A stretch of 64,000 nt of DNA, taken from contig OZ365113.1 in assembly GCA_977030845.1 (NCBI GenBank), positions 17,856,001 to 17,920,000 of the forward strand. Reading direction: 5' to 3'. The notes below the pieces were generated by a model. It worked only from the letters and a program-made list of their open reading frames with translations, ran no database searches and was not told where the DNA came from. Positions 1 through 55,635 of this stretch are shown here, piece by piece. A program made the translations under genes and the position numbers. This DNA is from Fimbriosthenelais zetlandica. Its lineage: Eukaryota. How positions within the stretch are numbered: the first letter of the stretch is position 1; each line of letters starts with the position of its first letter.

Positions 1-1633
1 TTTGTGTCCATAAAACAATTCCAAAAGACCCATTAGTATTATGAAGGATGTGTCATAGACCATGGTGTTAATGTAATGGCAAGCAATTCCCTGTCCCTTT
101 GGGCTGCACGTTCAACTCTTCTCCTCTCCCAATCAATCTATTACCACCCCAGTGCCTGTAGTTAAAGAAATCACTCGTTCAATCCCAAGCGACTCGGCCT
201 GAGGGAAGGCTCACAAGTGCTATGTGAGATATTTACACTGTGTTATTCAAGTGTACCTAATACTTGACAACATCTGCCAAGGCATAGGTTTACTGCATGT
301 CTGTGTGTATAGAGATATGTGGACCGGACAAATGATGAGTCTATTTGAGATAGTAATGCCTCCAGGCCCGATGGTAAACAAATGGGGGAAAGCGATGGTC
401 TCAGTAACAGCATGGAACAAACGAATTGTCTTGAATTGTTTGAGGCGCTCTTTTTCTCTGTTTGTCGTGCTAATATTGGTTCCCCAGTATCCACTCAATA
501 GTATGAACTGGCAAAGGTAGATTCCATAAGACCGATAGGGAGGGAGGGGTTGGAAAATGATATTTTGCTGTCCTAAAAATCAATATTGATTTGTTCAGCC
601 AGTTGTTGGCATGTCTCTGCCGTTGCTATCCTCTCGTTGGCCTCGAGTCAAGTATTTTATCATCAAAATTCAGAAAGTACCCAAAATTGGGAGATTCAGA
701 CAGGAGGATCTCAGATTTAGAACTGTTTCAAACTGATAAAACCTCCGATAAAAGATACTTTCTCTCTTAAAGAGGCTAACAGATTCACCTTATTGCGCCA
801 CACCCAGTAAATTGGTTGCCGTTGACAGCATTCTTCTGAAAGGCGGCGATGCTGTAGTGGTCCACTGAGTGAGGCAATATGACTTCCACAATCAAGATAC
901 GTTAAAACGAATTTGCTTCATTTGTTAACATTGTGTCTGATTGTATTCAATAAGGGATGTGAATGAAACGTGACCTAAATAAAGAAATTTGACCAGTATC
1001 CTGTTTCGAATCCTTTTCAGTCAGGGGAAGCCACATCTCCTTGCAACCAATGCTCTCGTCTAATACCAATCATGTAAATGGGCCCTTGTAAATCTCTATG
1101 GTAATCAAGGTCAAGTATGACTGTCTAAGGTCAAGTGTTGGTGTGCTGATGGGCAGCACAACTGGGTCATAAGGGCTAGTATGGAGACTACAAGAACATT
1201 GGCCATAATCCTACCTCCCTTAACCCCTAATAGGCAGCTTGATATCTGTAAGAATTAAAGGGTTTATATAATTGGACGCACAGAAACTGTCTGTCGAAGT
1301 GATTATGATGTCAGACACTGCTGTATTTCTTTAAATTGTATTTTCATCAGTGCGTCATGAAAATTATAGATTTTTCAAAGATATTTGGGGAAAGATGCAA
1401 AGGGTGAATGGTCCAGTTTGATATGTCAGAGAAAACGGTCCAGCTGCCAATCAGACACACACTATTTAACTCTCCAACAAGAAGTGGCTATTCAGAAGCG
1501 ATGAAAGGTGTCAGGGTCATTCCACGGGGGTGTCTAGAATCGATCTGCTCTTCCTGCCATTTTCGTCCCTCTATTCACTATTCAACACGGAGAGCAATTT
1601 GCCTTTTCACCAGGATCCTTAGGTCTTCTCTGT

Positions 1634-1668: not shown

Positions 1669-4512
1669 CTGAGAAATGATGACGATCTTACACCTCGATG
1701 GTGGAAATGGCTGCTTTGACAAGATCTGAAAATTGTCTGCAACACGAATGCATGTAAGCTGATCACGGCAGCCAAATGCATGTCTTGGTTCTCATATTCT
1801 ACCAGTACCAAGGTGAGGAAGACATCATGTGGTTTGGTTTTCCACTTGCATTCCTCTGGCAGATTAAAAGATGGTGAATATTGCATGGGTTGGTTTACAA
1901 AAGCACAAGATTGACCCTTCCCCAACCATGCTGCGTCTACATTACCTGCCAAGTAATCTCCTGTAACAATATCAGATTCATCACTGCAGTGATGAATCTC
2001 AACGATGATACTTATGGATTCGGGCTGTTGCTTGCTAAAGAGGATAACATCAATATTGATATCTACCAAAATGAATGGAATGTGAATGAATGACCAATGT
2101 TGGCTGCCCTAAATCTATAACAGTCATTCCAAAGAGCCATCATCTCTTTGATCTTTCCCTATTAGGGAAATAGTACAGGTAGGCTACGCTAAGAGAATGA
2201 TGTACACCAAAGGGTTGGCGGGGTTTCTTCCAGTATTTACATCGGTTCGATAGCCTATTTTCACTAAGAGTCGGTTCAAAGAGTACAAGGCATTTATATG
2301 TGACAAACACAGTCTTAGAAATCATGAACATTGCTTTACTTTACATGGATGATAAAAAATAGCCTTGGCAACTGCGGTCTCTAACTCAGGTATCCTATAT
2401 ACAAGACGTTAATCAATATATATAGCTTTAGTATAGCAGATGAAATCCAAATATCAAATGCTGCCAATCATGACTACCTTTTGATACCATTACCAACAAT
2501 CAGATACGCTGCTTTGACTATTTACCATTGGCAGATACATGTAACATAAGAACAGCTTGCATGATAGATGCGCTTACAGGGCGATTCAATGTTATCTTCA
2601 ACAAATAAATGTCTCTCCTTACAAGGACAGTGACTTTAGCATGGATTCATCTCGCCATCTTCCCTGCAACATCCCTTGCCAATGTAGTGATTTTATTGAA
2701 TTGCTCAATCAAGGAGCCTGAAAATTATGGTGATTTCCTAAAACAAAGCTTCCTACAGTTTCATAATTGATGCCTGGGAGCGGCAATCGGTCCCAGTGGA
2801 GCAGAAAAATAGAAACTTGAGTAGAACAAGAGCCTTGAGTCATTATCTGTGTCATTAATTCCCATGGTAGAGGAGACTTAATGGTTTTGACATTTGTTCT
2901 CTCTGCCTCACACATTGCTCCCCGGGTAAGTATTTGTCAAACAAATTAAGCAAGTCCTGCTCTGATGATTAAAGAGATTATGATCATTAGTAAAGACGTC
3001 CACCATTGGGATTATTGACGACAATTGCCTGTCATCTTTAATGGAATGAACCACACACTGAGGAAATCATTAGCTTTATTACGCCGAACATATCTAAACA
3101 AAGAGAATGAATGAAAATATCGAGAATTTTCAAAAATGATCTTAATGGTAGTCACATAGGAATTGCTTGGCGACTACCTATATTTCTTCTGAGAAATAAT
3201 ATGAACTATTTTGTATACTTCTTTCCTATAACTGTTGTATAAGGTTTGTTATGACAATCAGAAGAGGCCACCAATTGTATAGGAAACAGTAATATGGCCT
3301 TGCAGTGTCAAGCGTTCTAAGTGTGTGTTTATGTGTGGGTGTGGAAGGAGCCTTGGGGGTTGCGAGGATTAGGACCATTTAATAATAAAGGCACTACTGA
3401 GATTAGGTTTCATCTACTTCTCATGCAAAAGGAAACAGGTGTAGGAGGCCAGCTCAGCAGAAATCACCAATTCTATGTCAACCAAAAGGCTCCCTGTCTT
3501 ACGGTATCCAATAAATTGTGTCAATTCATACACATGAGGCAGAGAAGCCATAGATAATGATAACTGTCGAATTCGCATGATTTCCCAAATCATTGAATTC
3601 CCAAATCAGTGAATTCCCATATATATATACAAGCACATATTGCAAAAATCCCCTCCATTTCGGACTTGCTCATCCTTCAAACAGTAGATTTCAGAAATAT
3701 GTCATTATTAACCATGATTGACAGATCTGACGTTTTTTAGGCTATATTATATTTGGGATATCTGTCAGCGATGGTATAGATATATGTATTTTTAGCTGAT
3801 TAAACAGGCAAACACGCTCATGAAATAGGCCAGGTTGGAGCAATGCCAGAATATGGGAGACTCTCCACTGGCATTACCTCAAAGGCTTCAGGTTGCACCA
3901 TGACAATTGTCAATATTGCGGGGCCTGTAAGATATATAAGTAGCAGGAAGTCAATGGCCGGGCAGAATTGCATAGATAAAGCACACCATTTGACATTTTG
4001 TCGTGCAGGTAAGTGTTTGGGATGGACATAGGTTGAGCGGTTAAATCTGTGACGTGCATATATGGACTAAATTTGATAGAACGTACTCTCTTGTGGTGGC
4101 CTCGCCCTTCTATGCCAATGATAGACTCGAGGGTTTGCTGTCCACTATTAGGTGGATAAGACCCTCACATGGCCAACCCTAAACAGGTCATAAGGGTTTA
4201 ACTCTGTTAACTCTTTTAAGAGTTAAATCACTTACTAGCATGATTTCCCCCCGCTTTGACCAAGGGAAATCATTGAAATAATAACTTTGCATGCTATATC
4301 CTTATAATGCTTTTCCCAGGGAGGACCCCATTATATTCTACTTAATCTTGTATTACTCTAGCATCCAATCAGGTTATCCCTTACTACTACAGTGGAATCA
4401 TTGTCCCCATGGAAAATAAGTATCGGGGGAGTAGGGTCTGAGAGAAGTGGGCCATAGGGAGAGCCTCCCCATATAGAACTATAGGCCTATGCCTTATTTT
4501 ATTTGTTTTAAA

Positions 4513-4570: not shown

Positions 4571-7500
4571 AGGCATTTGCTATGCCTGCCTCCACGGGTA
4601 TTGGTATGTTGTAGGCATATTATGTTCTATAGAGCACCTGCACTGGTCAGAGAAATATCCATTGGACATTAGAAGAAAAAGACCCATAAGCTAGTGAACT
4701 TGAGAAATCAAGTGTGAGCTGGCTTTCACCCATACAATGCTCTATAATGGAGGCCCTTCTGATATCTGTAGTGCATGGGTGGATGAATCAAATTTAGTAG
4801 AATATTTAATATTAACACAACATGCACGGAATATTTGATTTTTATCACGTCTCAAGTATGTGATAAATAAAGACACTAGGGCAATTTGTAAGGGGAGAGT
4901 AGGGAGAAGTGGGCCATAGAGGGAAGGGAGCCACCCCAATTTGATTTTTTTTAAATGTTTTAAATCAGCCATTATTGATAGCCTACATTAATTTCTTTCC
5001 TAACCAAGCTCCACTAACCCTACACCCGTTGTTTGCCCGCATTGGAAACGGGGCCTGCTAGTGGGGTATTATATGCCTCACCAATATTCATTGATTGTCC
5101 TGCAGAAGTTGAAGGAATAGCACTGTAAGAAAATGTGAATGTTATTGCTCAAAATGTCTCTCGTACTATACATCCCTGTGTTAGCCACGGGCTATTGGAA
5201 TGCTAGAGGGCCATTTCTAAAATAGGAATATTTCATCACATAGCATTGCGAGAACTCATAAAGCTAGTACTGCTATAAAGTGCATCCGAAATGGAATATT
5301 TCTGGGTGGCAGGTCAGCATTGAAGATAATCTGATTAGGTATTTAGTCTTCATCAGCAAAGTGTCCAAATCTTGACTCAGCTCTGCCCCCAAGTGGCGGA
5401 TCTCATGATCAATCATGAACAATCTGGACTTGGCAAAGACTGTTTCAGCAAAGGGAGGGTCCTTGTATATCATCTATCACGATGTTAGATTTTTGCATTT
5501 CACGTCCAATACCCTCATTACTTCATAAGTCAAAGTATGGATAAAGTTTGAGCCATCCAACAAGTACCATACATACACCGAAATGAGATGAGTTCCCCAA
5601 ATGGGATTGTGCACATGGGGAAGTCCTGTTTATGCATTAGTGAAATACTGATTCCTCTGGTGGTGGACCTGTCATAATACAATAAATGCCACTAGTTGAA
5701 GTGGATAGAGATCGTATCTGAAAGGTGGCCAGCCTGGATCACTGGTGTGGGATCACACGCCAGATCACTCAGCCAATCATTACTTATTGATCGTGAACTT
5801 TGCAGCTGCTTGCCAGGACTGTCCTTCCACTTCAATGTTGGCAGGACATAACTGACCTGCAGACAATGCACTAATCAGCTTAAACTGATGCAAGACAGCT
5901 TAACAAATCCATATATTAACCATGCCCGAGACACACTTGTCACGAGACAATACAGTATAGGTTGAATGACCTGGTGGAAGCCTAAGAGGCAAGAACACAA
6001 AATTTAATTGGTTACAACTGAACTATTGTATTGCTGAAGAAGAAATTATTGAAAAAAGCACCATCAAAGATGAACAACATTTAAGGGGTCCGGCAGCTGG
6101 TTTCCAAGTAATTCCGATCAATCTTTAATGAGAAGGCAAGAAGCTAATCTTTGATTTCCCATGACAAAAAGTCTTTTGCTTTTGCACTGGTTTACCCATC
6201 GTGTATTCCCACAAAGGGACCGAGGTTCGACCTTATGTACTTTATTTGTTCAGTCTGTTTCTCCAGGGTAATTGCAGCGACAAGCTTCCATTCATATAAT
6301 AAGTTGGTACCCAATACTCTGCCGCTCACGCCCCTCTGGCTGCCTGTGTGATTTAGGTATTTCATATATGTTTGTCTGGACAAACAATTTTTTCTCATAA
6401 GACAGGTAGAAATTTAGATGTAATTTGCATTTTATGGATGGCAATTCATTATCAGTCAGAATAAACAAGCCACCAAATCAAATGACAAATATTGTGGTTT
6501 CCACAGGTTTCCTTTGCTCATACCAACAATGCCACCTCACAAATGGGCATGAATAATGTGTCTTCACAAGCAGCAAAGAACAAAAGGAGGTATCCTTGCC
6601 AAAAGAGACTAATTCCTGTATTGGTAATGATATCCCCTTTATCCTAAGCAAGGGATAACATCAAAAGATTGACAAAGGGACAGTAATCTACCCATTCTAA
6701 TGGAAGGGAAATATATTCAGTGCCAAACCCTTACATCAGGACATAGGTTTCATTCATCAGTGATAATCGCACCCCTTGATGCAGTTTCCTTTATTGTTTA
6801 TTGAAGTGTACATTCCGTGCTCAGAAGTCTACCAATTAATTACAAAAAGGAAGTAATCTATATGCCGATGATATGTAAAGAAAAAGCAGGAACAATAAAG
6901 TACGTGTAGAAATAAGAAATTTCAGGGGCTCTGTTCTAGAAAGGTTCAGCCCAGAGGGATTGGTGTACATAACACTCAAATTTTGAAGAATTTCACTTTC
7001 CATTGGAACAAATTCACTGGCTCTCTCCAAGGCAAGGAAATCACAGAGAACAGAGAACTACAAACGATACAAGGTCCTAACAAATTAGCACCCTTAAAGG
7101 CGCGTGTAAGCAGTGTATCAAAGTAAGGACTGCTCTGTAGATTCCTGTTGAATGCTTTGCATGTGTCACATGACCTAAGCCGTTGCTCCACTGTACATTT
7201 CGGATCTAAGCTTGTTTCATCCTGCGCTCACTTTTCAGCCCAGGAAGGACCGCCATGAGATTGAGTGAAGATAATAGAAGAGAAATTGGGGGTAGATGAC
7301 TTTTAATTATCAGTAGACAAGGTATTCAAGGGAATGGAGAGAATAGGCGAACGCATGCAATCAAGGGGTAGGGGGACAGGAAGGACGGATGCTGTTGGGT
7401 GTTTGGTGGAGAACACCAATTCCCAAAGGAATAGGATAGGGAAAAGGCAGGGAAAATGAGATGCAGGAGGAGGTGGAGAGGAGTTGTTACAAGGCCTTGT

Positions 7501-13695: not shown

Positions 13696-16600
13696 GTTCT
13701 GTACTTTTCTCTAATTTGTTCTAGTACGTATTTTACCTTGTCATCCGCATCCGAGTGTTACCACAGACAACCTAACAATGTTAACTAACATAATTATGTT
13801 AGAATACGACAGTACTGACCTATTATGATGGATATTTTGATGTTTTGGAGTGAATCAGTGGTCGGGCGTGTGTCATGTTTAGTTCCTGCGCTGCTCACGA
13901 TCACGTGGTGGCAGCACCGAACATTTTGATATAGATCGTAACTAAAATTGCACTTGTATGGTGATTGATAGGACAAAATTAATCATAGTAGGCGTATATT
14001 TTTGATGAGGTAGGTAGGCACATTTGATAATTTCACCCAAGACACTAAAGCAGCTTCAAAAATTGAAAAAAATACAGTTGCCTAAGTGTAAGAGACCGTG
14101 CCTCAAGAGTTAAGCCTGAAAAAGGCTACATGATGATGTGGAATTCCAGTATAGGCCTACTACATTCCACGGTCAGTATCACATTAAGGTGATAGGAGGA
14201 CCTGAAGGTGATAGGAGGACCTACTATTCGTATCTATTGCAGCTAAATATTTTCCTCAAATAGTTCTACTATAATAACCAATCCATTGCTAACGGTTGGT
14301 TGCAATGAAATAGGAGTGTACTTAAAATCTTATTATTTACCCCACTTCAACAAGAATAAATGCATTAGCAATCTTTGAAATCCTCTATCCCCAACACTGG
14401 ATGCATATGCAGAGTGTAAGCAAACAAGGTCTGTTCATTCCAGTCTTAATTGAGCAGTAATTAAACACCACAACCTCCAGTAGCTTTAATTAATCCCAGA
14501 ATTGCAATCCCTTCTAAAACACAAGCTGAGACTTTGATTGTATGAAATCAAGCCTGCAGCAGTTTGCGCTGTTCCTGTTTCCCCATGACGTAGTGCATGA
14601 TTAGTAAGGCAATCCCACCCTAGTTGAAGGAAGGACTCCTCTCTCTCAAACCTCTTTAAGCAGTTTTTGGACTGAGGACTGAGCATGGTTATTCGATAAA
14701 TTGAGCAGTACAATAGATGTGAGTAAATGATCTGATCCATTGGCATCAGATCGACTATAGAAGCTACTAAAGTACCATTAAAAATTAACCATATCGGCAT
14801 AACAAATTATAATACGTCAAAAGTAAGATGCAACAGGTTCCATTTATCCATCACATCAACTCCTTTTTAGGCCTCTATTATAAATTTTTCCTCCTCTTTC
14901 TTACTCTCTCTCAGTGAGAGGTTGGAGAGGTGTCTCGAAAATGATTAGGGGATCCCCTGAGGGTGTCCTGGCTAATTAAGAAACCCAGTTCACGTATTAG
15001 TTCCACTAGGCCCTTGACATATGGGGAGAAAAATAATGCATTGTCACACCCGGAGGTTGGAAAATTATGACAGGATACTGTGTCAAATCTGTCATGATCA
15101 GTTTCCCCAACCAATACAAGAACTAAAGATGATCTTAAAGATGTGCACCACACTATAGACAGCCCCAAAAAGCCATTGGATATTCAAGCACATTTGGCGA
15201 GATGGAGGGCGGCAGGATAGATGGTTGCACCCATGGGTGATAGGGAGAGAGGGTGGGAGCGAGGGACCTTTTACAGGATCAGTAGTGCTGTAGTATAGTA
15301 CTTGTACCAGCGGATAGATCTTTATAGCCTGGCATTGAAATACTGTGCATGGGCCAATCTGCTACTGGAAAATGGTTGTTATTAGGTTGCGGGCAGCGAC
15401 ACCCAATAAATAAATCGGACAGAAAAAGCTTGTGTGAGATGCAAGCTAACTAGACCTTAATTTGTGATTAATTTAGCAAATGGATGTTAACATAGTCCAT
15501 CAGAAATTAAACCCTGCAGGACCAACTGTCTTTTGCTAAGATTTGTTATTTTTATCGCCAGTTTTAATTAGGATAGCAAGAACAAGAGCCATAATGATGT
15601 CCGCTTGCGGGGGCGATATCGCACACTCGGAAGTGGCCAATCTCCATTGATTAGTCCATGATCAAGGTCGATGATGGATGGTTTAGCTTTTTTCTTTGTT
15701 AAAAGGATGTGAGTTTTAAAAGGATGTGTTCCAGCAGTTGATTACTTTGAGTACCATGTCTCTGGTAATGAATCTTGCCTTGGGAAGTATTAAAGGCGAT
15801 TTTTTAATTCCGAACATGATGTTTTATCATTTATATCACAAATCGAGGGGACACGAAAATTACTCACAATAGCCTATTGCTTATCAGAATTGCCTCCCTC
15901 TACTATTTCTTTCCCTAGATTCTTTGGTACTAACTGCACTTTAAGTTCTCTTCATATTTTAAAAATCATTAAGACAATAGGCCTAGATGCATATATGGGG
16001 TGTCATAGTACATGCGATCCAATTGCCATATACCCAGCTATATAGTGAGCAGATTACATTTGACAGCACTCTTATATGAATGCAGGCGATTCAGCTATGT
16101 CACACTATGACTGAGGATCACCTACATTTCAAGGCACTCTATGAGAATTATTCCCAGTATATAATATTATATGAAACTCATACTATCCTTTTGGACATGT
16201 AAGTAAATTGTCAATCTAGGTCAAACATCCATCATCATTAGCATCTTCTCTCTTTTCTTCCTTAGAAGACTATGATGTAAATTGTATAGCATACATAATC
16301 CCTAGTCCCTCAACTCCCTGAGGTATTCCTTGTCAACTCAATTTGCTATCAAATATTCCTGTGGCAAGCTGAGATTATTATCACCAGTCAGTATCCAGTA
16401 TACAGGCCTGCAATATAAGACAGTAAGACCATCAGGCAATGTCTGATTACATTGCTTCAAGCATGAATTTACTGTCGCATTAGATGCAGTGATAAGAGCC
16501 TTTCTTTATGGGAATTATACTGTCTGGCAAATAATGTTCAATAGAATTCAATAACGTTATCTTAAGGAAGGGAAACCTTTGTTGAGACATAATTAATAGG

Positions 16601-17232
16601 ACTATTAATTGAAACGGACACTATACAAATAAGGTTATGTAGACCTGTTAATTATAAGAATTTGTTTCTAACAAATGTGCAATGTCTTTAGAAACACCAT
16701 GAAAGGATAAAATAAGCCTTCTTTTTGGCATTACTCACACTTTCCCCTCCATTTCTAGCCTTGTCTAGATGAAGGTGAAATGAAGGTCGGGGAGGGGGTG
16801 AATTAGCCACGGCAAGATATATAGAACCAGATTAGACAATTACGAGAAAACCTCGAGCCACCTTGGATATCCTGGTACAATGGTTAAAAGACAATGCTTT
16901 TAGATGCAGACATCTCCAATAATAGAATCTAATACCATGTCTTGACCTTCTGTTCACTTCTTGCAGGATCTGGAGAATATACCCTCTGAAAACTGAAGCT
17001 GCCTTCAAAGGAAATCAAAGAAGCCAGATTCAGCCCAGTGTCACTGAACCCAATCATCAATATGTCATCAACACCCTTGGAATCGCCTGTTACGGACAGT
17101 GAAGAAGTCTACAGAATAACTACATTGATGCCCTGGTGATCTCACCTCCATTTTCCTCACTTCGATCCCTCACCCAGGCAATATTACCTTGTCAACCCAT
17201 CACCATGGATACATTCAAACTGAGATGATCAC

Positions 17233-17718
17233 ATGACAGGATGTACTCTGACCAGACACTTCCTTTGCGACATAGGTGACGTGCCGTGTAACACAGTGGA
17301 AAAGAGTACCATGCCACATCACATGCCCCAAGGAGCGGCAAATCACTCCGCCCCGGCGAATGATCCATTCGCAAACTCTTTACTGGCATCCTTGCAGTCA
17401 GTGCCCTCCCACCAGGGGGCTGCATGGACGTTAACGTCAGACACCCACTTCCGGATAGCAGTCCTTGTCTGTTCGAGTGTTCTTGCAGTTATGTTGGTGC
17501 TACGATTGTTATATCTAAGGAAAAGGGCCAAAGAGGGCCGTTTGTACCACAGACTTGATTCTGAAGTTGAAGGACAAAAAGACAGAGAATCCTTATTGCG
17601 AACACGATTGGATGGGTTTGAGGAGGAGGATTTTGAGACCCACATAGGGGGGTTGGATGTACCATTACTTCAAGAGGTTTGTATAGAAGTAAGTGATCAT
17701 ACATTTTATGTTTCCTGA
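17233..17718 (+). CDS. Small single-pass membrane protein of unknown family (161 aa, or 135 aa from ATG 17311)
   Basis: Open frame with one hydrophobic helix IAVLVCSSVLAVMLVLRLLYL, a basic stop-transfer RKRAK and an acidic tail. The exon starts at acceptor TTCACTTCTTGCAG|16967, with an in-frame stop just upstream of the ATG. accATG at 17311; AATAAA at 18409-18414. Confidence 0.7.
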   Translation: MTGCTLTRHFLCDIGDVPCNTVEKSTMPHHMPQGAANHSAPANDPFANSLLASLQSVPSHQGAAWTLTSDTHFRIAVLVCSSVLAVMLVLRLLYLRKRAKEGRLYHRLDSEVEGQKDRESLLRTRLDGFEEEDFETHIGGLDVPLLQEVCIEVSDHTFYVS

Positions 17719-49300: not shown

Positions 49301-52300
49301 ATGGCACTTTTGTTAAAGTTACCACCAGTTATCTTTACATTTTTTATGATAATATGCGCCGTTGCACAGGAGAAATCAACTGACGAAATTGTAGCTCAGG
49401 CCTGGTTGGAAGAATATAATATAGAAGCTGAGAGAGCTTATTATGAGTCCACAGAGGCGGCCTGGGACTACAACACAAACATCACGGACTTCAACCAAGA
49501 GAAATCGGTAGGTGTTACATACATATATACATGATGTACAGGAGGAATGGTGCGGAATGGGAAATTATATTCCTACAAAGAAGTACTTCTATATTCGAAG
49601 GTGTGGTAATATTTGTTATTGAGTTCATCATCGTATTTGAACTGATCCAATTTTATTATGATTACGTCAATTTCATATTTTCAAGTAATATTATTATTAA
49701 CTTCAAAACGATGAGCTATAAATACTTTTCGGAAGGGGGATTTTGTCATAATAAGACTTGACAATTGGTCAAATGCTTAATGTGGTGTATCCTTTTTGAG
49801 ACCTACATCTCGTGACAATGCCTAATTATTAGGTCTGATATACAGCCTCAGGCCTGCTCCTATGTATTTGGGTCACACATTCTGGGGAAAAAATCACTCC
49901 TTCCAATGGTTCTAAAGTGTATTTAATATTTAAATAATCATCTCGATCTGATTAACAAGTAGTATTCTGTAAAATAATCCAAAGGTTTAACAAAATAACT
50001 TCCATATTATGTGATGTAATCGGCCCTTGAAATGGAAGTTCCAATTGAGTATACAATTGGCATTATCTCTATCGTTATGCAATCTGCTTGGGAGAAAATC
50101 AAAGGGCATGGTTTGAAGTTGAGTTAATAAAGGACATTAGGTATATTCTGGGTTATTGTTTCTCTATACTTCATGTTAATCTAGCTGAGGATATTTGGGT
50201 GGCATTGGTTGACAGTTGTATCAATTAGGATCATGCGACCTCCTAACAATCGTATAGCCGTTATCAAGGAATGTGATAAAACAACGCAATTAATCATTAA
50301 ATGTATAACGGATCACTGATAACAGTTTCACAATATGTATTTTCCCACAGCTGGATCAGCTCCCCATCTTTTATAAATTTAACAAAATATATACATGGCT
50401 TTTCATATGAAAATAAATCGCCAGTTTATTTTAGACAATATTGCGGCCATATGTTTTTCGACATATCAAACTGCCATATGGTTTTCCTGCTGAACTGGCC
50501 ATGCCGATAACCAGACTTTCAAAGTTTGGGTTCAAAACAGACAGGATTTAGGTTTATGAGTGATTCACCCCAGCCCGCATACCGAGCTGGGTCAATTACT
50601 ATAGCAGCTCTCTGCAGGTCATGTAGCGGACGAGCTGCTCAGGGGCACAAGGTAAAGGCCAAGGAAATGAGGTTATGGTTCGGGTACAGGAGAATTTTTA
50701 TTTTTTAATCTCAGAGAAGTCTGTGGCGTATGGCAATTTGACCCGAAAATGAACTACATGTCCTTTAAACGCTGTGCCCCATCTTACTAAACAGGAGGAA
50801 AGCCATATAGTGGACCCTTCAAGCGTGAAATTGAAGCTTAAGTTTACATATTGTCCTTCGGGGATTTCCTCCGGACAACACAGGTAACACATTTCCATAA
50901 TGTATTTTTACTGCGTATGTTTGCAAGGAAGGAATCTTTTACATTTTCAGGATAATGCCAATGTAGTGCGTGCTAAATTTGATTTAGCAGCTGCACAAAA
51001 TGCATCTTCTTTTGACTGGCGCAGCTTTGAAGATGAATTGACAAAACGTGAGCTGCAAAAAATTGCAATAGCTAATACAGCTATGCTCCCTGATGACAAA
51101 GTAAGAAGGGTAAGTGAGCTTTTCATCAAACTACTTGCTTACACCGGAAGTAGTTTGAACATTTTGGAGAATGAATAGACCGATAAGGGTCATTGATGCA
51201 GAATTTATTTCTATTAAATACTGTCATTCAACCCATTTTATTTACATCTTAAGGTGAGTGAACTTCGCAGCAACTTAAAGAAGATCTACAGCACAGGCAA
51301 GGTGTGTAACAAGCCCGGAGACACATCAGGCAAATGTTATCCCTTAGACCCGGGTAAGTCTGTTCAGTTACTAGTTACTAGTTGGGAGCATTGCTAAACA
51401 GGTTCCAGATCTATCATTTCGCATTGGAATATAAATTCCCATAATTTAACAGAAGGTATTTTATATATATGGTAAAATGAATCAAGCTGTTAAATAACCC
51501 AGATCTGACCCGTATTATGGCCACATCGCGCGACTATGACACTTTGGAATGGGCATGGAAGGGCTGGCGTGATGCCACAGGCAAACACATGAGAGAACAG
51601 TACGAGGAATACGTGGACCTTCAGAATGAGGCAGCCCTACTAGAAGGTGAGGCCTGCATCCATCCCCACAGCTGATGGATCTTGGGACAATGGGTCTTTA
51701 TTAGAATTTCTTCAGAGAAGAGTTTTCATGGAATATATGCCTATCGGAACATGGGACAGCTACTGGTTTATCAAGCCCTAAATATCCACAGTAAAATAAC
51801 TAATTATCTTTAACAATAAAACAAAAACATTTTAAACTATTTAAAAAACGGGAGGGGGTACCTCCTGTTACCTACTATGGAAGGGCTACTATATGCTAGT
51901 ACTAAAATATATAGTTCAAACTGAGGAAATTTTCATCATTGGACTTTGCTGCTTGGTATACATGTATACATACTGTACCACCTTTTTTATAGTGAGATTT
52001 AAATTGTGTACCAAATAATGTGTACCAAATTTTCAAAAGGTTTTACTGACCAGGGGGACTACTGGAGGTCGTGGTATGAGACAGAGGGATTTGAGAAGAT
52101 AGTGGCTGATCTCTGGGAGGAAGTGAAACCACTCTACGAGCAACTTCATGCTTACGTTCGCCGAAAGTTAATGGAACAATACCCCGAAGAGAAGTTCCCA
52201 GAGACACGACAAATGCCAGCACACCTTCTTGGTAATAATCTGACCTATCTTTACATCTCACCTTTAGATTCCTGGAATGAGCCATATATACGTTCACCTT

Positions 52301-55300
52301 ATTTTTGTAACATCTGTTCAATTCGTTGTACATGTAGGCCTACGTTGTAATTTCTAGGCAATATGTGGGCGCAGTCCTGGGATGGACTTGAACCTCTTGT
52401 TCGACCGTACATGAATAAAACAGCTATAGATGTTACCAAAGCTATGGTTGATCAGGTCAGAATAATTATTCACCTTTCATCTATCAATTTTAGTGCTTAA
52501 ATTGAAAACCCGCTCCCTCAAATGATAATGAAAATGTTGTCTGGGTTCTAACTATCATAAGTATTTCCTACTAGGGATATGATGCCACGAAAATGTTTGA
52601 ACTTTCTGAGGATTTCTTCACTTCTCTTGGTCTGGAGCCTATGCCCGAATTGTTCTGGAACAAATCTATGATTGTGAAGCCAGAAGACAGAGAAGTGGTT
52701 TGTCATGCGTCTGCATGGGATTTCTACAACAAGAAGGACTTCAGGTCAGATATAAATTGTTATAATATTATTGTGAGCCAAACCAACTCCTATAACCTCA
52801 CTTCAGCAAGAAAATTGTCAATCCAATGTCAGGCATTATACTCATTGCAACTTGGATTGGGTGGTGGAGGTGACCATTGCCCACTGACAATATTCTTAAT
52901 CTGCATTTACTAACCCTCCACATTTGGCCCAAGGATAAAGAGAAAAGTGTTTATCCCCAAATAGTGTAACTTTGTATAACATGGCAATGACTTGTATGTT
53001 GTCAACAGGATCAAACAATGCACTGATATAACGTCCGAGTATCTATTGACAACCCACCATGAAATGGGCCATGTTCAGTACTTCCTACAATACAAGGATC
53101 TTCCTGTCGAGTTCAGGGATGGAGCAAATCCAGGTACATTCCCATTATCTTAAAAACAATATGTATATTACTTAAGGTCCCTTTTCTTTGTATCAATACC
53201 AATAGGATCAAACAGTGCACAGATATTACAATGGAGTACCTGGTGACAACCCACCATGAAATGGGCCATATTCAGTACTACCTACAATACAAACCGCTAC
53301 CTGTCAAGTTCAGACGAGGAGCCAACCCAGGTAAAAGGGGGTAGTGTGTAGTACACAAAAGCCTTCTTTGACACTTAATCAAATGTGAAAAATATGATAA
53401 TCCTGATGCCAAAAATAGTTAAGGAGAATGCCTCTTATTCCCATGAAATCTCTGCATGCTAGTTTGACTATGTGACAGCTCATTCACTGACGCTTCTCTC
53501 ATCTTTCCCGCACAGGTTTTCATGAGGCTGTCGGCGATGTCATGTCTTTATCTGTTTCTACACCAGAACATCTCCATAAAGTTGGTCTCCTCGAGACAGT
53601 AGAAGATGATGAAGGTATTTTAAGATGCTTAGTTCGGCACTTCTCTCTTCTATACCCAATTGAATGTACAGTGACATTGGGGAAAATGGAGACAATATGT
53701 AGGATAATATGGAAATATGTAGGTTTCTAATAACTAATTTAACCGTATTGTTTCAGAGGCTGATATCAACTTTCTGATGTCACAAGCACTGTCGAAGATA
53801 GCTTTCCTTCCATTTGGCTACCTCATCGACCAATGGCGCTGGTCTGTGTTCAGAGATGAGACCAAATCCACTCATTACAATGAGGGCTGGTGGAAACTAA
53901 GGTATAACACAAAAACCAACTGATAACATGTCAGTTTTAATACTATGAAATTGGTTAAAATAACGTAAAACGACTACTGAGTAGCTGTCCATATGTTATA
54001 TGCTAGTCTCTGTTTTGCTATCTCCTTATCATGAGACTGCTTGTAATATTGGGTTTCAGATTTTAGACCTGTTTGACATTTTATTTTAAGGTGTAATATT
54101 CAGGGAATGTCACCCCCTGTAACAAGATCAGAGTCGGACTTTGATCCTGGGGCGAAATACCATATTCCAGGCAACACACCGTACATCAGGTATGTGAGAG
54201 GGGTATATAGGTCTACAGGGGGATGTAACTGGAATGGGATGTAGTTGATTGGATCATGCAAATGTCTCTCCCAGCAGTAAAATGAAATTATTTCTCAGTA
54301 ATAAAACATCGATCCTATCTTCAATTGAATACCGAGTATCACAACAATAATATATGCCACTAATTTGTATGTGACGTGAGGAGGGATTAGGGACTGGATA
54401 CCACAGGATATTCCACCAAAATATGCTTTAATATAAAGTTATGACAATATTTCCATTTCCCTTATAATATGCGTAGTTCATGGCCCCTTTGATCGTACAG
54501 TAACCTCATTTCCCTTGCTACGCCCCCTTTATAAATACTGCACGTGTGTGAAGATAAGCTATAGGCCCTAGCCCAGGTATCGCATTTATACCAGGGTAGG
54601 CCCGACATGGCTAACAAGGAACATGATTAAATTGGTGTTAAATAAAAGCTTATCACTAAAATTTTACATTAAGTGACTTACCGCCATCTTTATAAAGATG
54701 CTGCCGACATGTTCATCCAGTATTCGGGAGATTATAACGTAATCACTTGGTACAATCCATTAGTAATTTTGTGACGAATTCCTTGCACGCTTGAGGTTCA
54801 ACTTCTCACGGTCAAAAGAATGACCGGCCAATAAGCTATATTGTAGAGAAAGACACAACACTTCCGTTTAGATCTAAAAACAGACCAGGTCAATTGGTTC
54901 TGGCAGCAAAATAAGCTTTTCAATCTGTTATGGTACTATATATAGCTAACAAGCTAGGTAAAATTTGTACTGAATTATCTATGCACAAATCTACAAATTT
55001 CTTTGATTTTGTTTTACATTTCTTTCCCATTTATTCTTTGTATTGTCCTGATGTATTGTATCAATAATGTTATTGATAATAAAATGTATGGTATTATTTC
55101 AGGTATTTTGTGTCCTACATACTTCAGTTCCAGATGCACGAAGCATTGTGTGAGATTGCCGACGGAAATGCCTCCCTTCATCGCTGTGATATATATCAAT
55201 CAAAGGAAGCTGGAGAGAAATTGGGGTAAAATTAATGTTATTATGCCAGGCATCAGTCATTCTCCCTCCCCGATCTCTGCCCTTTAATTGGTTTCTATTA

Positions 55301-55635
55301 TGATTTACCTTAGATTTACATGTATTTGAATGTCCATGCTTGTATTTTGTAGGAACATGTTGAAGCTAGGGTCTTCCAAGATATGGCCGGACGCCCTGGA
55401 GGAAGTGACAGGAACCAGAACAATGTCCGCCACATCACTGCTGAAATATTTCGAAAAGTTACATGATTGGCTGAAAAAAGAGAACGAAGGACATGATGTC
55501 ACTTGGGAGGAGAACTGCCCTGAGGGCAGTATTATAAGCCCTACCAGTTCTGCTACATTGACAAGTCCCTTGTCTTTTACAGTATTAGTTTTCTGCTTTC
55601 TATTTACTCTATTGAAAGGTGCCCGAGGCATCTAA
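49301..55635 (+). CDS. ACE: Angiotensin-converting enzyme-like peptidyl-dipeptidase (peptidase M2), single catalytic domain, 647 aa
   Basis: Exons 49301-49507, 50951-51109, 51254-51353, 51503-51646, 52040-52231, 52358-52455, 52575-52744, [53009-53133 or 53206-53330], 53516-53614, 53757-53901, 54091-54189, 55103-55225, 55353-55635; 1944 nt in frame. Signal peptide plus ACE motifs [74 protein letters not shown]. Confidence 0.97.
53009..53133 (+). CDS. ACE: ACE active-site exon, copy A ([41 protein letters not shown])
   Basis: Acceptor GTCAACAG|G, donor CAG|GTACAT, 125 nt, phase 2 to phase 1, intact HEMGH. Confidence 0.9.
53206..53330 (+). CDS. ACE: ACE active-site exon, copy B ([41 protein letters not shown])
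   Basis: Acceptor after pyrimidine tract TCCCTTTTCTTTG...CAATAG|G, donor CAG|GTAAAA, 125 nt, phase 2 to phase 1, intact HEMGH. Confidence 0.9.

What the first reader, a model, noticed from the sequence alone, without database searches (positions are those of the whole stretch)
53009..53330. Duplicated, apparently mutually exclusive exons encode the ACE catalytic zinc motif
Two tandem 125-nt exons each encode the complete HHEMGH segment, with intact splice sites and identical phases (2 to 1). Including both, or neither, shifts the frame, so a functional mRNA must contain exactly one. They differ at 11 synonymous codons and 7 of 41 amino acids with no disabling change, which points to an old duplication with both copies under selection. 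No other ACE exon is duplicated here. I know of no described case of an ACE-family enzyme swapping its active-site exon, though I could not search the literature.
Basis: partly seen in the sequence, partly recalled or inferred. Interest (0 to 1): 0.9.

Follow-up and report, generated by a model that had tools for sequence, protein, structure and literature searches.

The report
ACE gene with swappable active-site exon
This invertebrate's one-domain ACE (angiotensin-converting enzyme) gene has two side-by-side versions of the exon that builds its zinc active site, almost certainly used one at a time; they differ at the two pocket residues that set the two halves of human ACE apart, and the same switch is in gene models of molluscs, sea urchins and another annelid but in no paper I could find.

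Summary
A 13-exon, 647-aa single-domain ACE gene (49301-55635, + strand) has two tandem 125-nt copies of the HHEMGH exon, 53009-53133 and 53206-53330. Both have AG/GT splice sites and the same phase. Using both or neither shifts the frame into early stop codons.

I could not test splicing in this species. No sequencing run was listed and its protein is not in the databases. Mutually exclusive use therefore rests on comparison.

The same exon is tandemly duplicated in Capitella, Ostrea, Pecten, Littorina and Lytechinus. RefSeq isoforms of equal length differ only there, and assembled oyster transcripts carry either copy.

The recurring pattern is the most interesting result. One copy carries Phe plus Asp or Gly, and another Tyr plus Arg. 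These are the positions of human C-domain Phe391/Glu403 and N-domain Tyr369/Arg381, which shape the S2 pocket and domain selectivity. Here exon A is F/D and exon B is Y/R.

With those two sites masked, copies group by lineage. This suggests repeated duplication with convergence, or long-term homogenisation.

No searchable paper describes this.

It is a new member of a known kind (tandem-duplicated alternative exons).

The parts
49301..55635 (+). Single-domain ACE (Peptidase_M2) gene with 13 exon positions, encoding 647 aa with either exon 8 copy. It has an N-terminal hydrophobic leader and a C-terminal hydrophobic tail.
   Evidence: Exon model with GT/AG at every junction and one open frame. 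Pfam PF01401 hits on the exon pieces. 55-61% identity to invertebrate ACEs.
52575..52744 (+). Exon 7, ending ...[10 protein letters not shown] with a split Arg codon (phase 2). It is the shared upstream partner of both alternative exons.
53009..53133 (+). Exon 8A (125 nt), encoding [41 protein letters not shown]. The S2 pocket positions are Phe and Asp, like the human C domain (Phe391/Glu403).
   Evidence: The PDB alignment places F and D opposite F967 and E979 of full-length human ACE.
53134..53205 (+). 72-nt intron between the two copies, the shortest in the gene (all others are at least 119 nt). A candidate branch site, TACTTAAG, lies about 41 nt from the donor of 8A, which could sterically block A-to-B splicing.
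   Evidence: Sequence and exon table. The branch site is my reading of the sequence, not a test.
53206..53330 (+). Exon 8B (125 nt), encoding [41 protein letters not shown]. The S2 pocket positions are Tyr and Arg, like the human N domain (Tyr369/Arg381).
   Evidence: It scores 59.7 bits against the N domain and 52.0 against the C domain.
53516..53614 (+). Exon 9 (GFHEAVGD...), the shared downstream partner. It carries the Glu that aligns with the third zinc ligand of the HEXXH...E motif.

Best explanation
Exons 8A and 8B are a mutually exclusive pair made by tandem exon duplication. Each mRNA takes exactly one, giving two 647-aa ACE isoforms that are identical except for 7 residues around the zinc-binding helix. 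Exclusivity is enforced by the reading frame. Each exon is 125 nt, so including both or neither runs into an early stop, and such mRNAs should be removed by nonsense-mediated decay. The short 72-nt spacer probably adds steric blocking. The switch appears to retune the S2 substrate pocket. 8A gives Phe plus Asp, like the human C domain. 8B gives Tyr plus Arg, like the human N domain. One single-domain gene would then make two enzymes with different peptide or inhibitor preferences, which vertebrates achieve with two domains in one chain. The gene structure, the frame logic, the residue correspondence and the same switch in other species are shown. Splicing of both copies in this animal, nonsense-mediated decay, steric blocking and the change of specificity are inferred.
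For: Structure and frame. Both copies are full matches to Peptidase_M2. Selection: dS 0.78, dN 0.13 and ratio 0.17 for the pair. Only the exon and its splice-site bases stay alike. If all 24 differences had fallen at random on one copy, 7 or fewer amino-acid changes with no stop occurred in 0 of 20,000 simulations.

The same exon is tandemly duplicated in five other loci:
- Capitella teleta: Y/R then F/D, 36-nt spacer.
- Ostrea edulis: Y/R then F/G, 45-nt spacer.
- Pecten maximus: 4 copies.
- Littorina saxatilis: 2 copies.
- Lytechinus variegatus: 4 copies.

Equal-length RefSeq isoforms in Pecten, Mizuhopecten, Ostrea, Magallana, Littorina, Biomphalaria, Lytechinus and Strongylocentrotus differ only at this exon. 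Intronless assembled oyster contigs carry either the F/G or the Y/R exon.

Residue mapping comes from alignment to human ACE chains. Tyr369/Arg381 versus Phe391/Glu403 are the S2 determinants of N-domain selectivity (PMC2975193). Five of the eight active-site residues that distinguish the two human domains (D354, S357, T358, Y369, R381) lie in this exon (PMC7148434). A and B differ at three of those five positions.
Against: No RNA from this species could be examined. No sequencing run was listed, and neither this protein nor a close relative is in the protein collections. A milder decay model is not rejected by the window's sequence alone: with half the differences neutral on one copy, P = 0.16. 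A 72-nt intron is not clearly too short to splice. No convincing selector or docking RNA pairing was found, since the inverted repeats are at chance level. Several related ACE genes have a single copy of this exon: Owenia, Lineus, Lamellibrachia, Paralvinella and Helobdella. No enzyme data exist for any such isoform pair.
Confidence: 0.85

Rival explanations
1. Only one copy is spliced, and the other is an unused relic of a tandem duplication that has not yet decayed.
For: There is no transcript evidence in this species. The crude half-neutral simulation is not rejected (P = 0.16). Several relatives manage with one copy.
Against: Both copies keep the open frame, both splice sites, every conserved family residue and equal Pfam scores. 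The introns beside them have lost all alignable similarity. The ratio dN/dS is 0.17, whereas at least 0.5 is expected if one copy were free. The two copies hold the same F/D and Y/R states that recur in alternative exons known to be used in other phyla.
Confidence: 0.1
2. The pair is an assembly artefact, such as a haplotype merge or collapsed paralogues, and the real gene has one exon.
For: No raw reads could be laid on the region.
Against: The copies differ at 24 of 125 bases and at 7 amino acids, and they sit 72 nt apart with unrelated flanks. Haplotype duplications are long and nearly identical. The same architecture is present in independent assemblies of Capitella, Ostrea, Pecten, Littorina and Lytechinus.
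Confidence: 0.01
3. Both copies are real alternative exons, but the difference is functionally neutral and there is no specificity switch, for example two regulatory variants that merely allow tissue-specific splicing control.
For: No kinetic data exist. Outside the two signature sites the copies are no more alike by type than across types. In human ACE, selectivity also needs residues outside this exon (PMC7148434).
Against: The F plus non-basic versus Y plus Arg split recurs in the window, Capitella, oysters, scallops, Littorina and Lytechinus. By rough background frequencies, a two-exon cluster would hold one of each only about 16% of the time. These positions contact the P2 group of N-selective inhibitors in crystal structures.
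Confidence: 0.25

Closest known systems
ACE-like genes of scallops (Pecten maximus, Mizuhopecten yessoensis), oysters (Ostrea edulis, Magallana gigas and M. angulata), Littorina saxatilis and sea urchins (Lytechinus, Strongylocentrotus), with RefSeq isoforms X1, X2 and so on
   Same: The same exon is tandemly duplicated. It has the same position and phase throughout, and is 125 nt in the molluscs and Capitella but fused with the next exon in Lytechinus. Isoforms of equal length differ only there. There is usually one Phe plus Asp/Gly copy and one Tyr plus Arg copy.
   Different: These genes have two to four copies, in a different order (Y/R first in Ostrea and Littorina). Spacers range from 45 nt to over 1 kb. 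In Lytechinus the exon is fused with the next one. These are automatic gene models, and I found no paper that describes them.
Capitella teleta ACE gene CAPTEDRAFT_175968 (annelid)
   Same: It has two 125-nt copies with intact splice sites, one F/D and one Y/R.
   Different: The order is reversed (Y/R first) and the spacer is only 36 nt. Only the second copy is in the annotated protein. The gene falls in a different ACE clade from the window's gene.
Human somatic ACE, N and C domains
   Same: The two active sites differ at the same two S2 pocket positions (Tyr369/Arg381 versus Phe391/Glu403), and the same stretch carries 5 of the 8 residues that distinguish the domains.
   Different: Vertebrates obtain the two sites by duplicating the whole domain and expressing both in one chain. 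Here one domain would be switched by splicing. Exon 8A has Asp where the human C domain has Glu.
Classic mutually exclusive exon pairs in other genes, for example alpha-tropomyosin exons 2/3 and pyruvate kinase M exons 9/10 (from my own knowledge), and the NALCN channel's alternative selectivity-filter exons (PMC3557258, seen)
   Same: These are tandem duplicated exons of equal length, used one at a time, that swap a functional core while the rest of the protein is unchanged. NALCN's alternative exons mimic the specificity of paralogues, as here.
   Different: They belong to different protein families. Whether this pair relies on steric blocking, nonsense-mediated decay or regulated factors is unknown.

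Membership tests
Peptidase family M2 (ACE) | Sequence match to the Peptidase_M2 domain over its whole length | tested here: met
   Exon pieces hit PF01401 from profile position 2 to 581. The assembled 647-aa product is 55-61% identical to invertebrate ACEs over about 600 residues.
Peptidase family M2 (ACE) | HEXXH zinc motif plus a downstream Glu ligand | tested here: met
   HHEMGH is present in both 8A and 8B. The Glu of GFHEAVGD in exon 9 aligns with the family's conserved HEA.
Peptidase family M2 (ACE) | Dipeptidyl carboxypeptidase activity | not testable with these tools
   This needs a recombinant enzyme assay.
Mutually exclusive exons from tandem exon duplication | Adjacent homologous exons of equal length and phase with intact splice sites | tested here: met
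Mutually exclusive exons from tandem exon duplication | Including both or neither destroys the reading frame | tested here: met
   With both exons a stop appears at codon 412. With neither, a stop appears at codon 360.
Mutually exclusive exons from tandem exon duplication | Transcripts of this gene contain exactly one of the two exons, and each is seen | not testable with these tools
   No run was listed for this genome, and its protein is absent from the collections. In oysters the equivalent test is met by assembled transcripts.
Mutually exclusive exons from tandem exon duplication | Both copies kept under purifying selection, or conserved in relatives | tested here: met
   dN/dS is 0.17 and the flanks cannot be aligned. 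Equivalent pairs are kept in Capitella, bivalves, Littorina and Lytechinus, with synonymous sites saturated or nearly so in most of them. No close relative of this species was available.
Steric-hindrance type of mutual exclusion | Donor-to-branch-point distance too short for the two exons to be spliced to each other | tested here: inconclusive
   The spacer is 72 nt, against at least 119 nt for every other intron of the gene. The candidate branch site about 41 nt from the donor is only my reading. The spacers of 36 nt in Capitella and 45 nt in Ostrea are clearer cases.
N-domain-like versus C-domain-like ACE active sites | Tyr/Arg versus Phe/acidic at the S2 pocket positions (human 369/381 versus 391/403) | tested here: met
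   Alignments to human ACE chains. The role of these residues is taken from PMC2975193 and PMC7148434.
N-domain-like versus C-domain-like ACE active sites | Different substrate and inhibitor selectivity of the two forms | not testable with these tools
   This needs kinetics on the two recombinant isoforms.

The most novel reading that the evidence does not exclude
A two-state S2 pocket (Phe plus acidic or small, versus Tyr plus Arg) is a repeatedly selected property of animal ACE. Vertebrates fixed it by domain duplication. Many marine invertebrates, including this worm, reach it by alternative splicing of a duplicated zinc-motif exon. This has arisen independently, or been maintained for hundreds of millions of years, in annelids, bivalves, gastropods and echinoids. 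ACE would then be a textbook case of convergent routes to the same enzymatic dimorphism, and invertebrate 'single-domain' ACEs would in effect be two enzymes.
Probability: 0.4. Interest if true: 0.8.

Novelty: new member of a known kind. Interest (0 to 1): 0.62.

Why it matters
ACE is a major drug target, and the different jobs of its N and C domains are a long-standing topic. Invertebrate ACEs are treated as single-site enzymes that are 'N-like' or 'C-like'. If one gene makes both pocket types by swapping one exon, two things follow. Published characterisations of invertebrate ACEs, such as oyster CgACE, describe only one of at least two isoforms. The origin of domain-specific selectivity also becomes directly testable in natural isoform pairs that differ by only 5-14 residues. 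The recurrence across phyla is also a clean case for studying convergent evolution against long-term maintenance of alternative exons.

Tried and rejected
- **RNA and DNA reads:** both searches for sequencing runs listed nothing, so no reads could be laid on the junctions.
- **This species' own protein or transcripts:** a search of representatives with exon 7 and three word-indexed searches, two of them using alignments that included the window's exon pieces, found nothing closer than 61% overall or 76% in the middle region.
- **Selector or docking RNA pairings:** six short inverted repeats around the pair are about what chance gives for 771 nt, so I make no claim from them.
- **Ancient orthology of exon types:** same-type identity does not exceed cross-type identity once the two signature sites are masked. 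A single Y/R clade is rejected (p-AU 5e-13). With only 39 columns, and possible co-evolution with the rest of each protein, this cannot separate independent duplication from homogenisation.
- **JGI annelid-like transcripts:** P0263 (Y/R) and P0354 (F/D) differ at 59 sites spread along the protein, so they are not isoforms of one gene. The differences are enriched in this exon, 10 of 41 against 49 of 571 elsewhere.
- **Haplotype-merge artefact:** rejected on sequence grounds.
- **Literature:** eight searches found no description of alternative zinc-motif exons in ACE (the oyster paper was read). The library lacks most subscription journals.

Full report
**What is there**

The window holds one ACE gene on the + strand. 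I built a 13-exon model (49301-55635) in which every junction is GT/AG. With either copy of exon 8, the coding sequence is 1944 nt and encodes 647 aa. The exon pieces match Pfam Peptidase_M2 from profile position 2 to 581. The product is 55-61% identical to single-domain invertebrate ACEs.

Exon 8 occurs twice, at 53009-53133 (A) and 53206-53330 (B). Each copy is 125 nt, follows an AG and precedes a GT. The two are separated by a 72-nt intron. They share 101 of 125 bases.

Using both copies gives a stop at codon 412, and using neither gives a stop at codon 360. Sensitive searches found no second copy of any other exon in this gene and no second ACE gene in the window.

**Is it more than a leftover?**

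- The repeat covers the exon plus 6 nt upstream and 3 nt downstream only.
- The 72 nt on either side align no better than shuffled sequence.
- For the pair, dS is 0.78, dN is 0.13 and the ratio is 0.17.
- If all 24 in-frame differences had fallen at random on one copy, 7 or fewer amino-acid changes without a stop never occurred in 20,000 trials.
- A milder model, with half the changes neutral on one copy, is not rejected (P = 0.16).

The window alone therefore argues for selection on both copies but does not prove it.

**Direct test not possible**

Two searches for public sequencing runs listed none. Neither this protein nor any close relative is in the protein collections. Splicing in this animal remains unobserved. 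Earlier notes of the scan call the genome an annelid. In my tree the protein sits on its own long branch among spiralian and deuterostome ACEs.

**Comparative evidence**

I compared database isoforms of other invertebrates that have equal length. In the following species they differ only in the stretch encoded by this exon:

- Pecten maximus X1-X3
- Mizuhopecten yessoensis X1-X4
- Ostrea edulis X1/X2
- Magallana gigas and M. angulata X1/X2
- Littorina saxatilis X1/X2
- Biomphalaria glabrata X1/X2
- Lytechinus variegatus and L. pictus X1-X3
- Strongylocentrotus purpuratus X1-X4

The genomic loci show tandem copies with intact splice sites:

| Species | Copies | Spacer |
|---|---|---|
| Capitella teleta | 2 | 36 nt |
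| Ostrea edulis | 2 | 45 nt |
| Pecten maximus | 4 | 139 nt between the last two |
| Littorina saxatilis | 2 | over 1 kb |
| Lytechinus variegatus | 4 | over 500 nt |

In Capitella only the second copy is in the annotated protein. Intronless assembled oyster contigs match M. gigas isoform X1 (F/G exon) or X2 (Y/R exon) to within a few residues, so both forms are spliced into mRNA there.

Within most of these pairs synonymous sites are saturated or nearly so, while dN is 0.06-0.13. The copies are therefore old and constrained.

Lineus, Lamellibrachia, Paralvinella, Helobdella and Owenia have one copy of this exon.

**What the switch changes**

Aligned to human ACE, the exon corresponds to N-domain residues 345-385 and to C-domain residues 943-983 of the full-length chain. 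Exon A has Phe and Asp where the human C domain has Phe391 and Glu403. Exon B has Tyr and Arg where the N domain has Tyr369 and Arg381.

These two residues line the S2 pocket, bond the N-selective inhibitor RXP407 and are replaced in the C domain (PMC2975193). Of the eight active-site residues that distinguish the two human domains, five lie in this stretch: D354, S357, T358, Y369 and R381 (PMC7148434). A and B differ at three of those five positions.

The same split recurs. There is one Phe plus Asp/Gly copy and one Tyr plus Arg copy in the window, Capitella, oysters, scallops, Littorina and both Lytechinus species.

A rough estimate uses the frequencies of these residue pairs in 154 ACE sequences. 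By those, a two-exon cluster would hold one of each about 16% of the time. The recurrence is therefore unlikely to be chance, although the lineages may not be independent.

**One old switch or many?**

With the two signature sites masked, same-type exons of different species are no more alike than cross-type exons. Copies group by lineage, with the window's A and B together (89/85 support). A single Tyr/Arg clade is rejected (p-AU 5e-13). The order of the copies also differs: F/D comes first here and in the last two Pecten copies, while Y/R comes first in Capitella, Ostrea and Littorina.

The simplest reading is repeated duplication with convergence on the same two states. An old pair whose copies co-evolve with the rest of each protein cannot be excluded with 39 columns.

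**How exclusivity is probably kept**

The frame rule is shown. That such mRNAs are degraded is inference from general knowledge of nonsense-mediated decay.

The 72-nt spacer is the shortest intron in the gene, all others being at least 119 nt. Its pyrimidine tract and a possible branch site, TACTTAAG, put the branch about 41 nt from the donor of exon A. From my own knowledge, that is within the range where steric blocking is known in alpha-tropomyosin. This is a reading of the sequence, not a test. Short inverted repeats near the pair are at chance level.

**Novelty**

Eight literature searches and a reading of the oyster CgACE paper found no description of alternative zinc-motif exons in ACE. 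Human catalogues of tandem-duplicated exon substitutions do not mention ACE.

The phenomenon is visible in RefSeq gene models, so this window adds a new member. The apparently undescribed points are the cross-phylum pattern and its match to the N/C pocket residues of human ACE. The scan's other note on this same stretch (s1-184605) pointed to that match, and I checked it independently.

**Verdict**

- A specificity switch is plausible, at roughly 0.6, but untested.

Noticed in passing
window 51101-51111: Exon 2 has two in-frame donors 9 nt apart, GTAAGA at 51101 and GTAAGT at 51110. Alignment to relatives favours the distal one, which keeps the residues VRR, but the proximal one could give a 3-residue shorter variant.
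   Followed up: partly
L010 (Owenia fusiformis) 3779-3940 and 4180-4335; 16315-16482, 16674-16802 and 17460-17600: The Owenia ACE gene has a single zinc-motif exon but two tandem copies of the exon-2 equivalent and three of the exon-12 equivalent (the YFVS...CDIY helix). Its two database proteins, P0190 and P0499, differ only in the latter.
   Followed up: partly
L001 (Lineus longissimus); proteins P0191 and P0288, residues 122-145: Lineus isoforms X1 and X2 have equal length and differ only in the exon-3 equivalent. This gives ACE yet another alternative-exon position in a nemertean.
   Followed up: no
L002 (Capitella teleta) 5130-5254: This is an intact, unannotated Tyr/Arg copy of the zinc-motif exon. 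It lies 36 nt upstream of the annotated Phe/Asp copy.
   Followed up: yes
protein P0366 (Magallana gigas, UniRef A0A8W8MKK0, 667 aa): This gene model strings both alternative exons together in frame through a different acceptor, giving two HHEMGH motifs. It is probably an annotation error rather than a real double-motif enzyme.
   Followed up: no
window 55560-55632: The protein ends in a hydrophobic stretch ([14 protein letters not shown]) followed by KGARGI. This suggests a membrane anchor (transmembrane or GPI), as in Owenia and Lineus ACE.
   Followed up: no
L009 (Helobdella robusta) 1-1111, minus strand: A second ACE gene (629-aa product) lies head to head with the first, about 900 nt away.
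   Followed up: no
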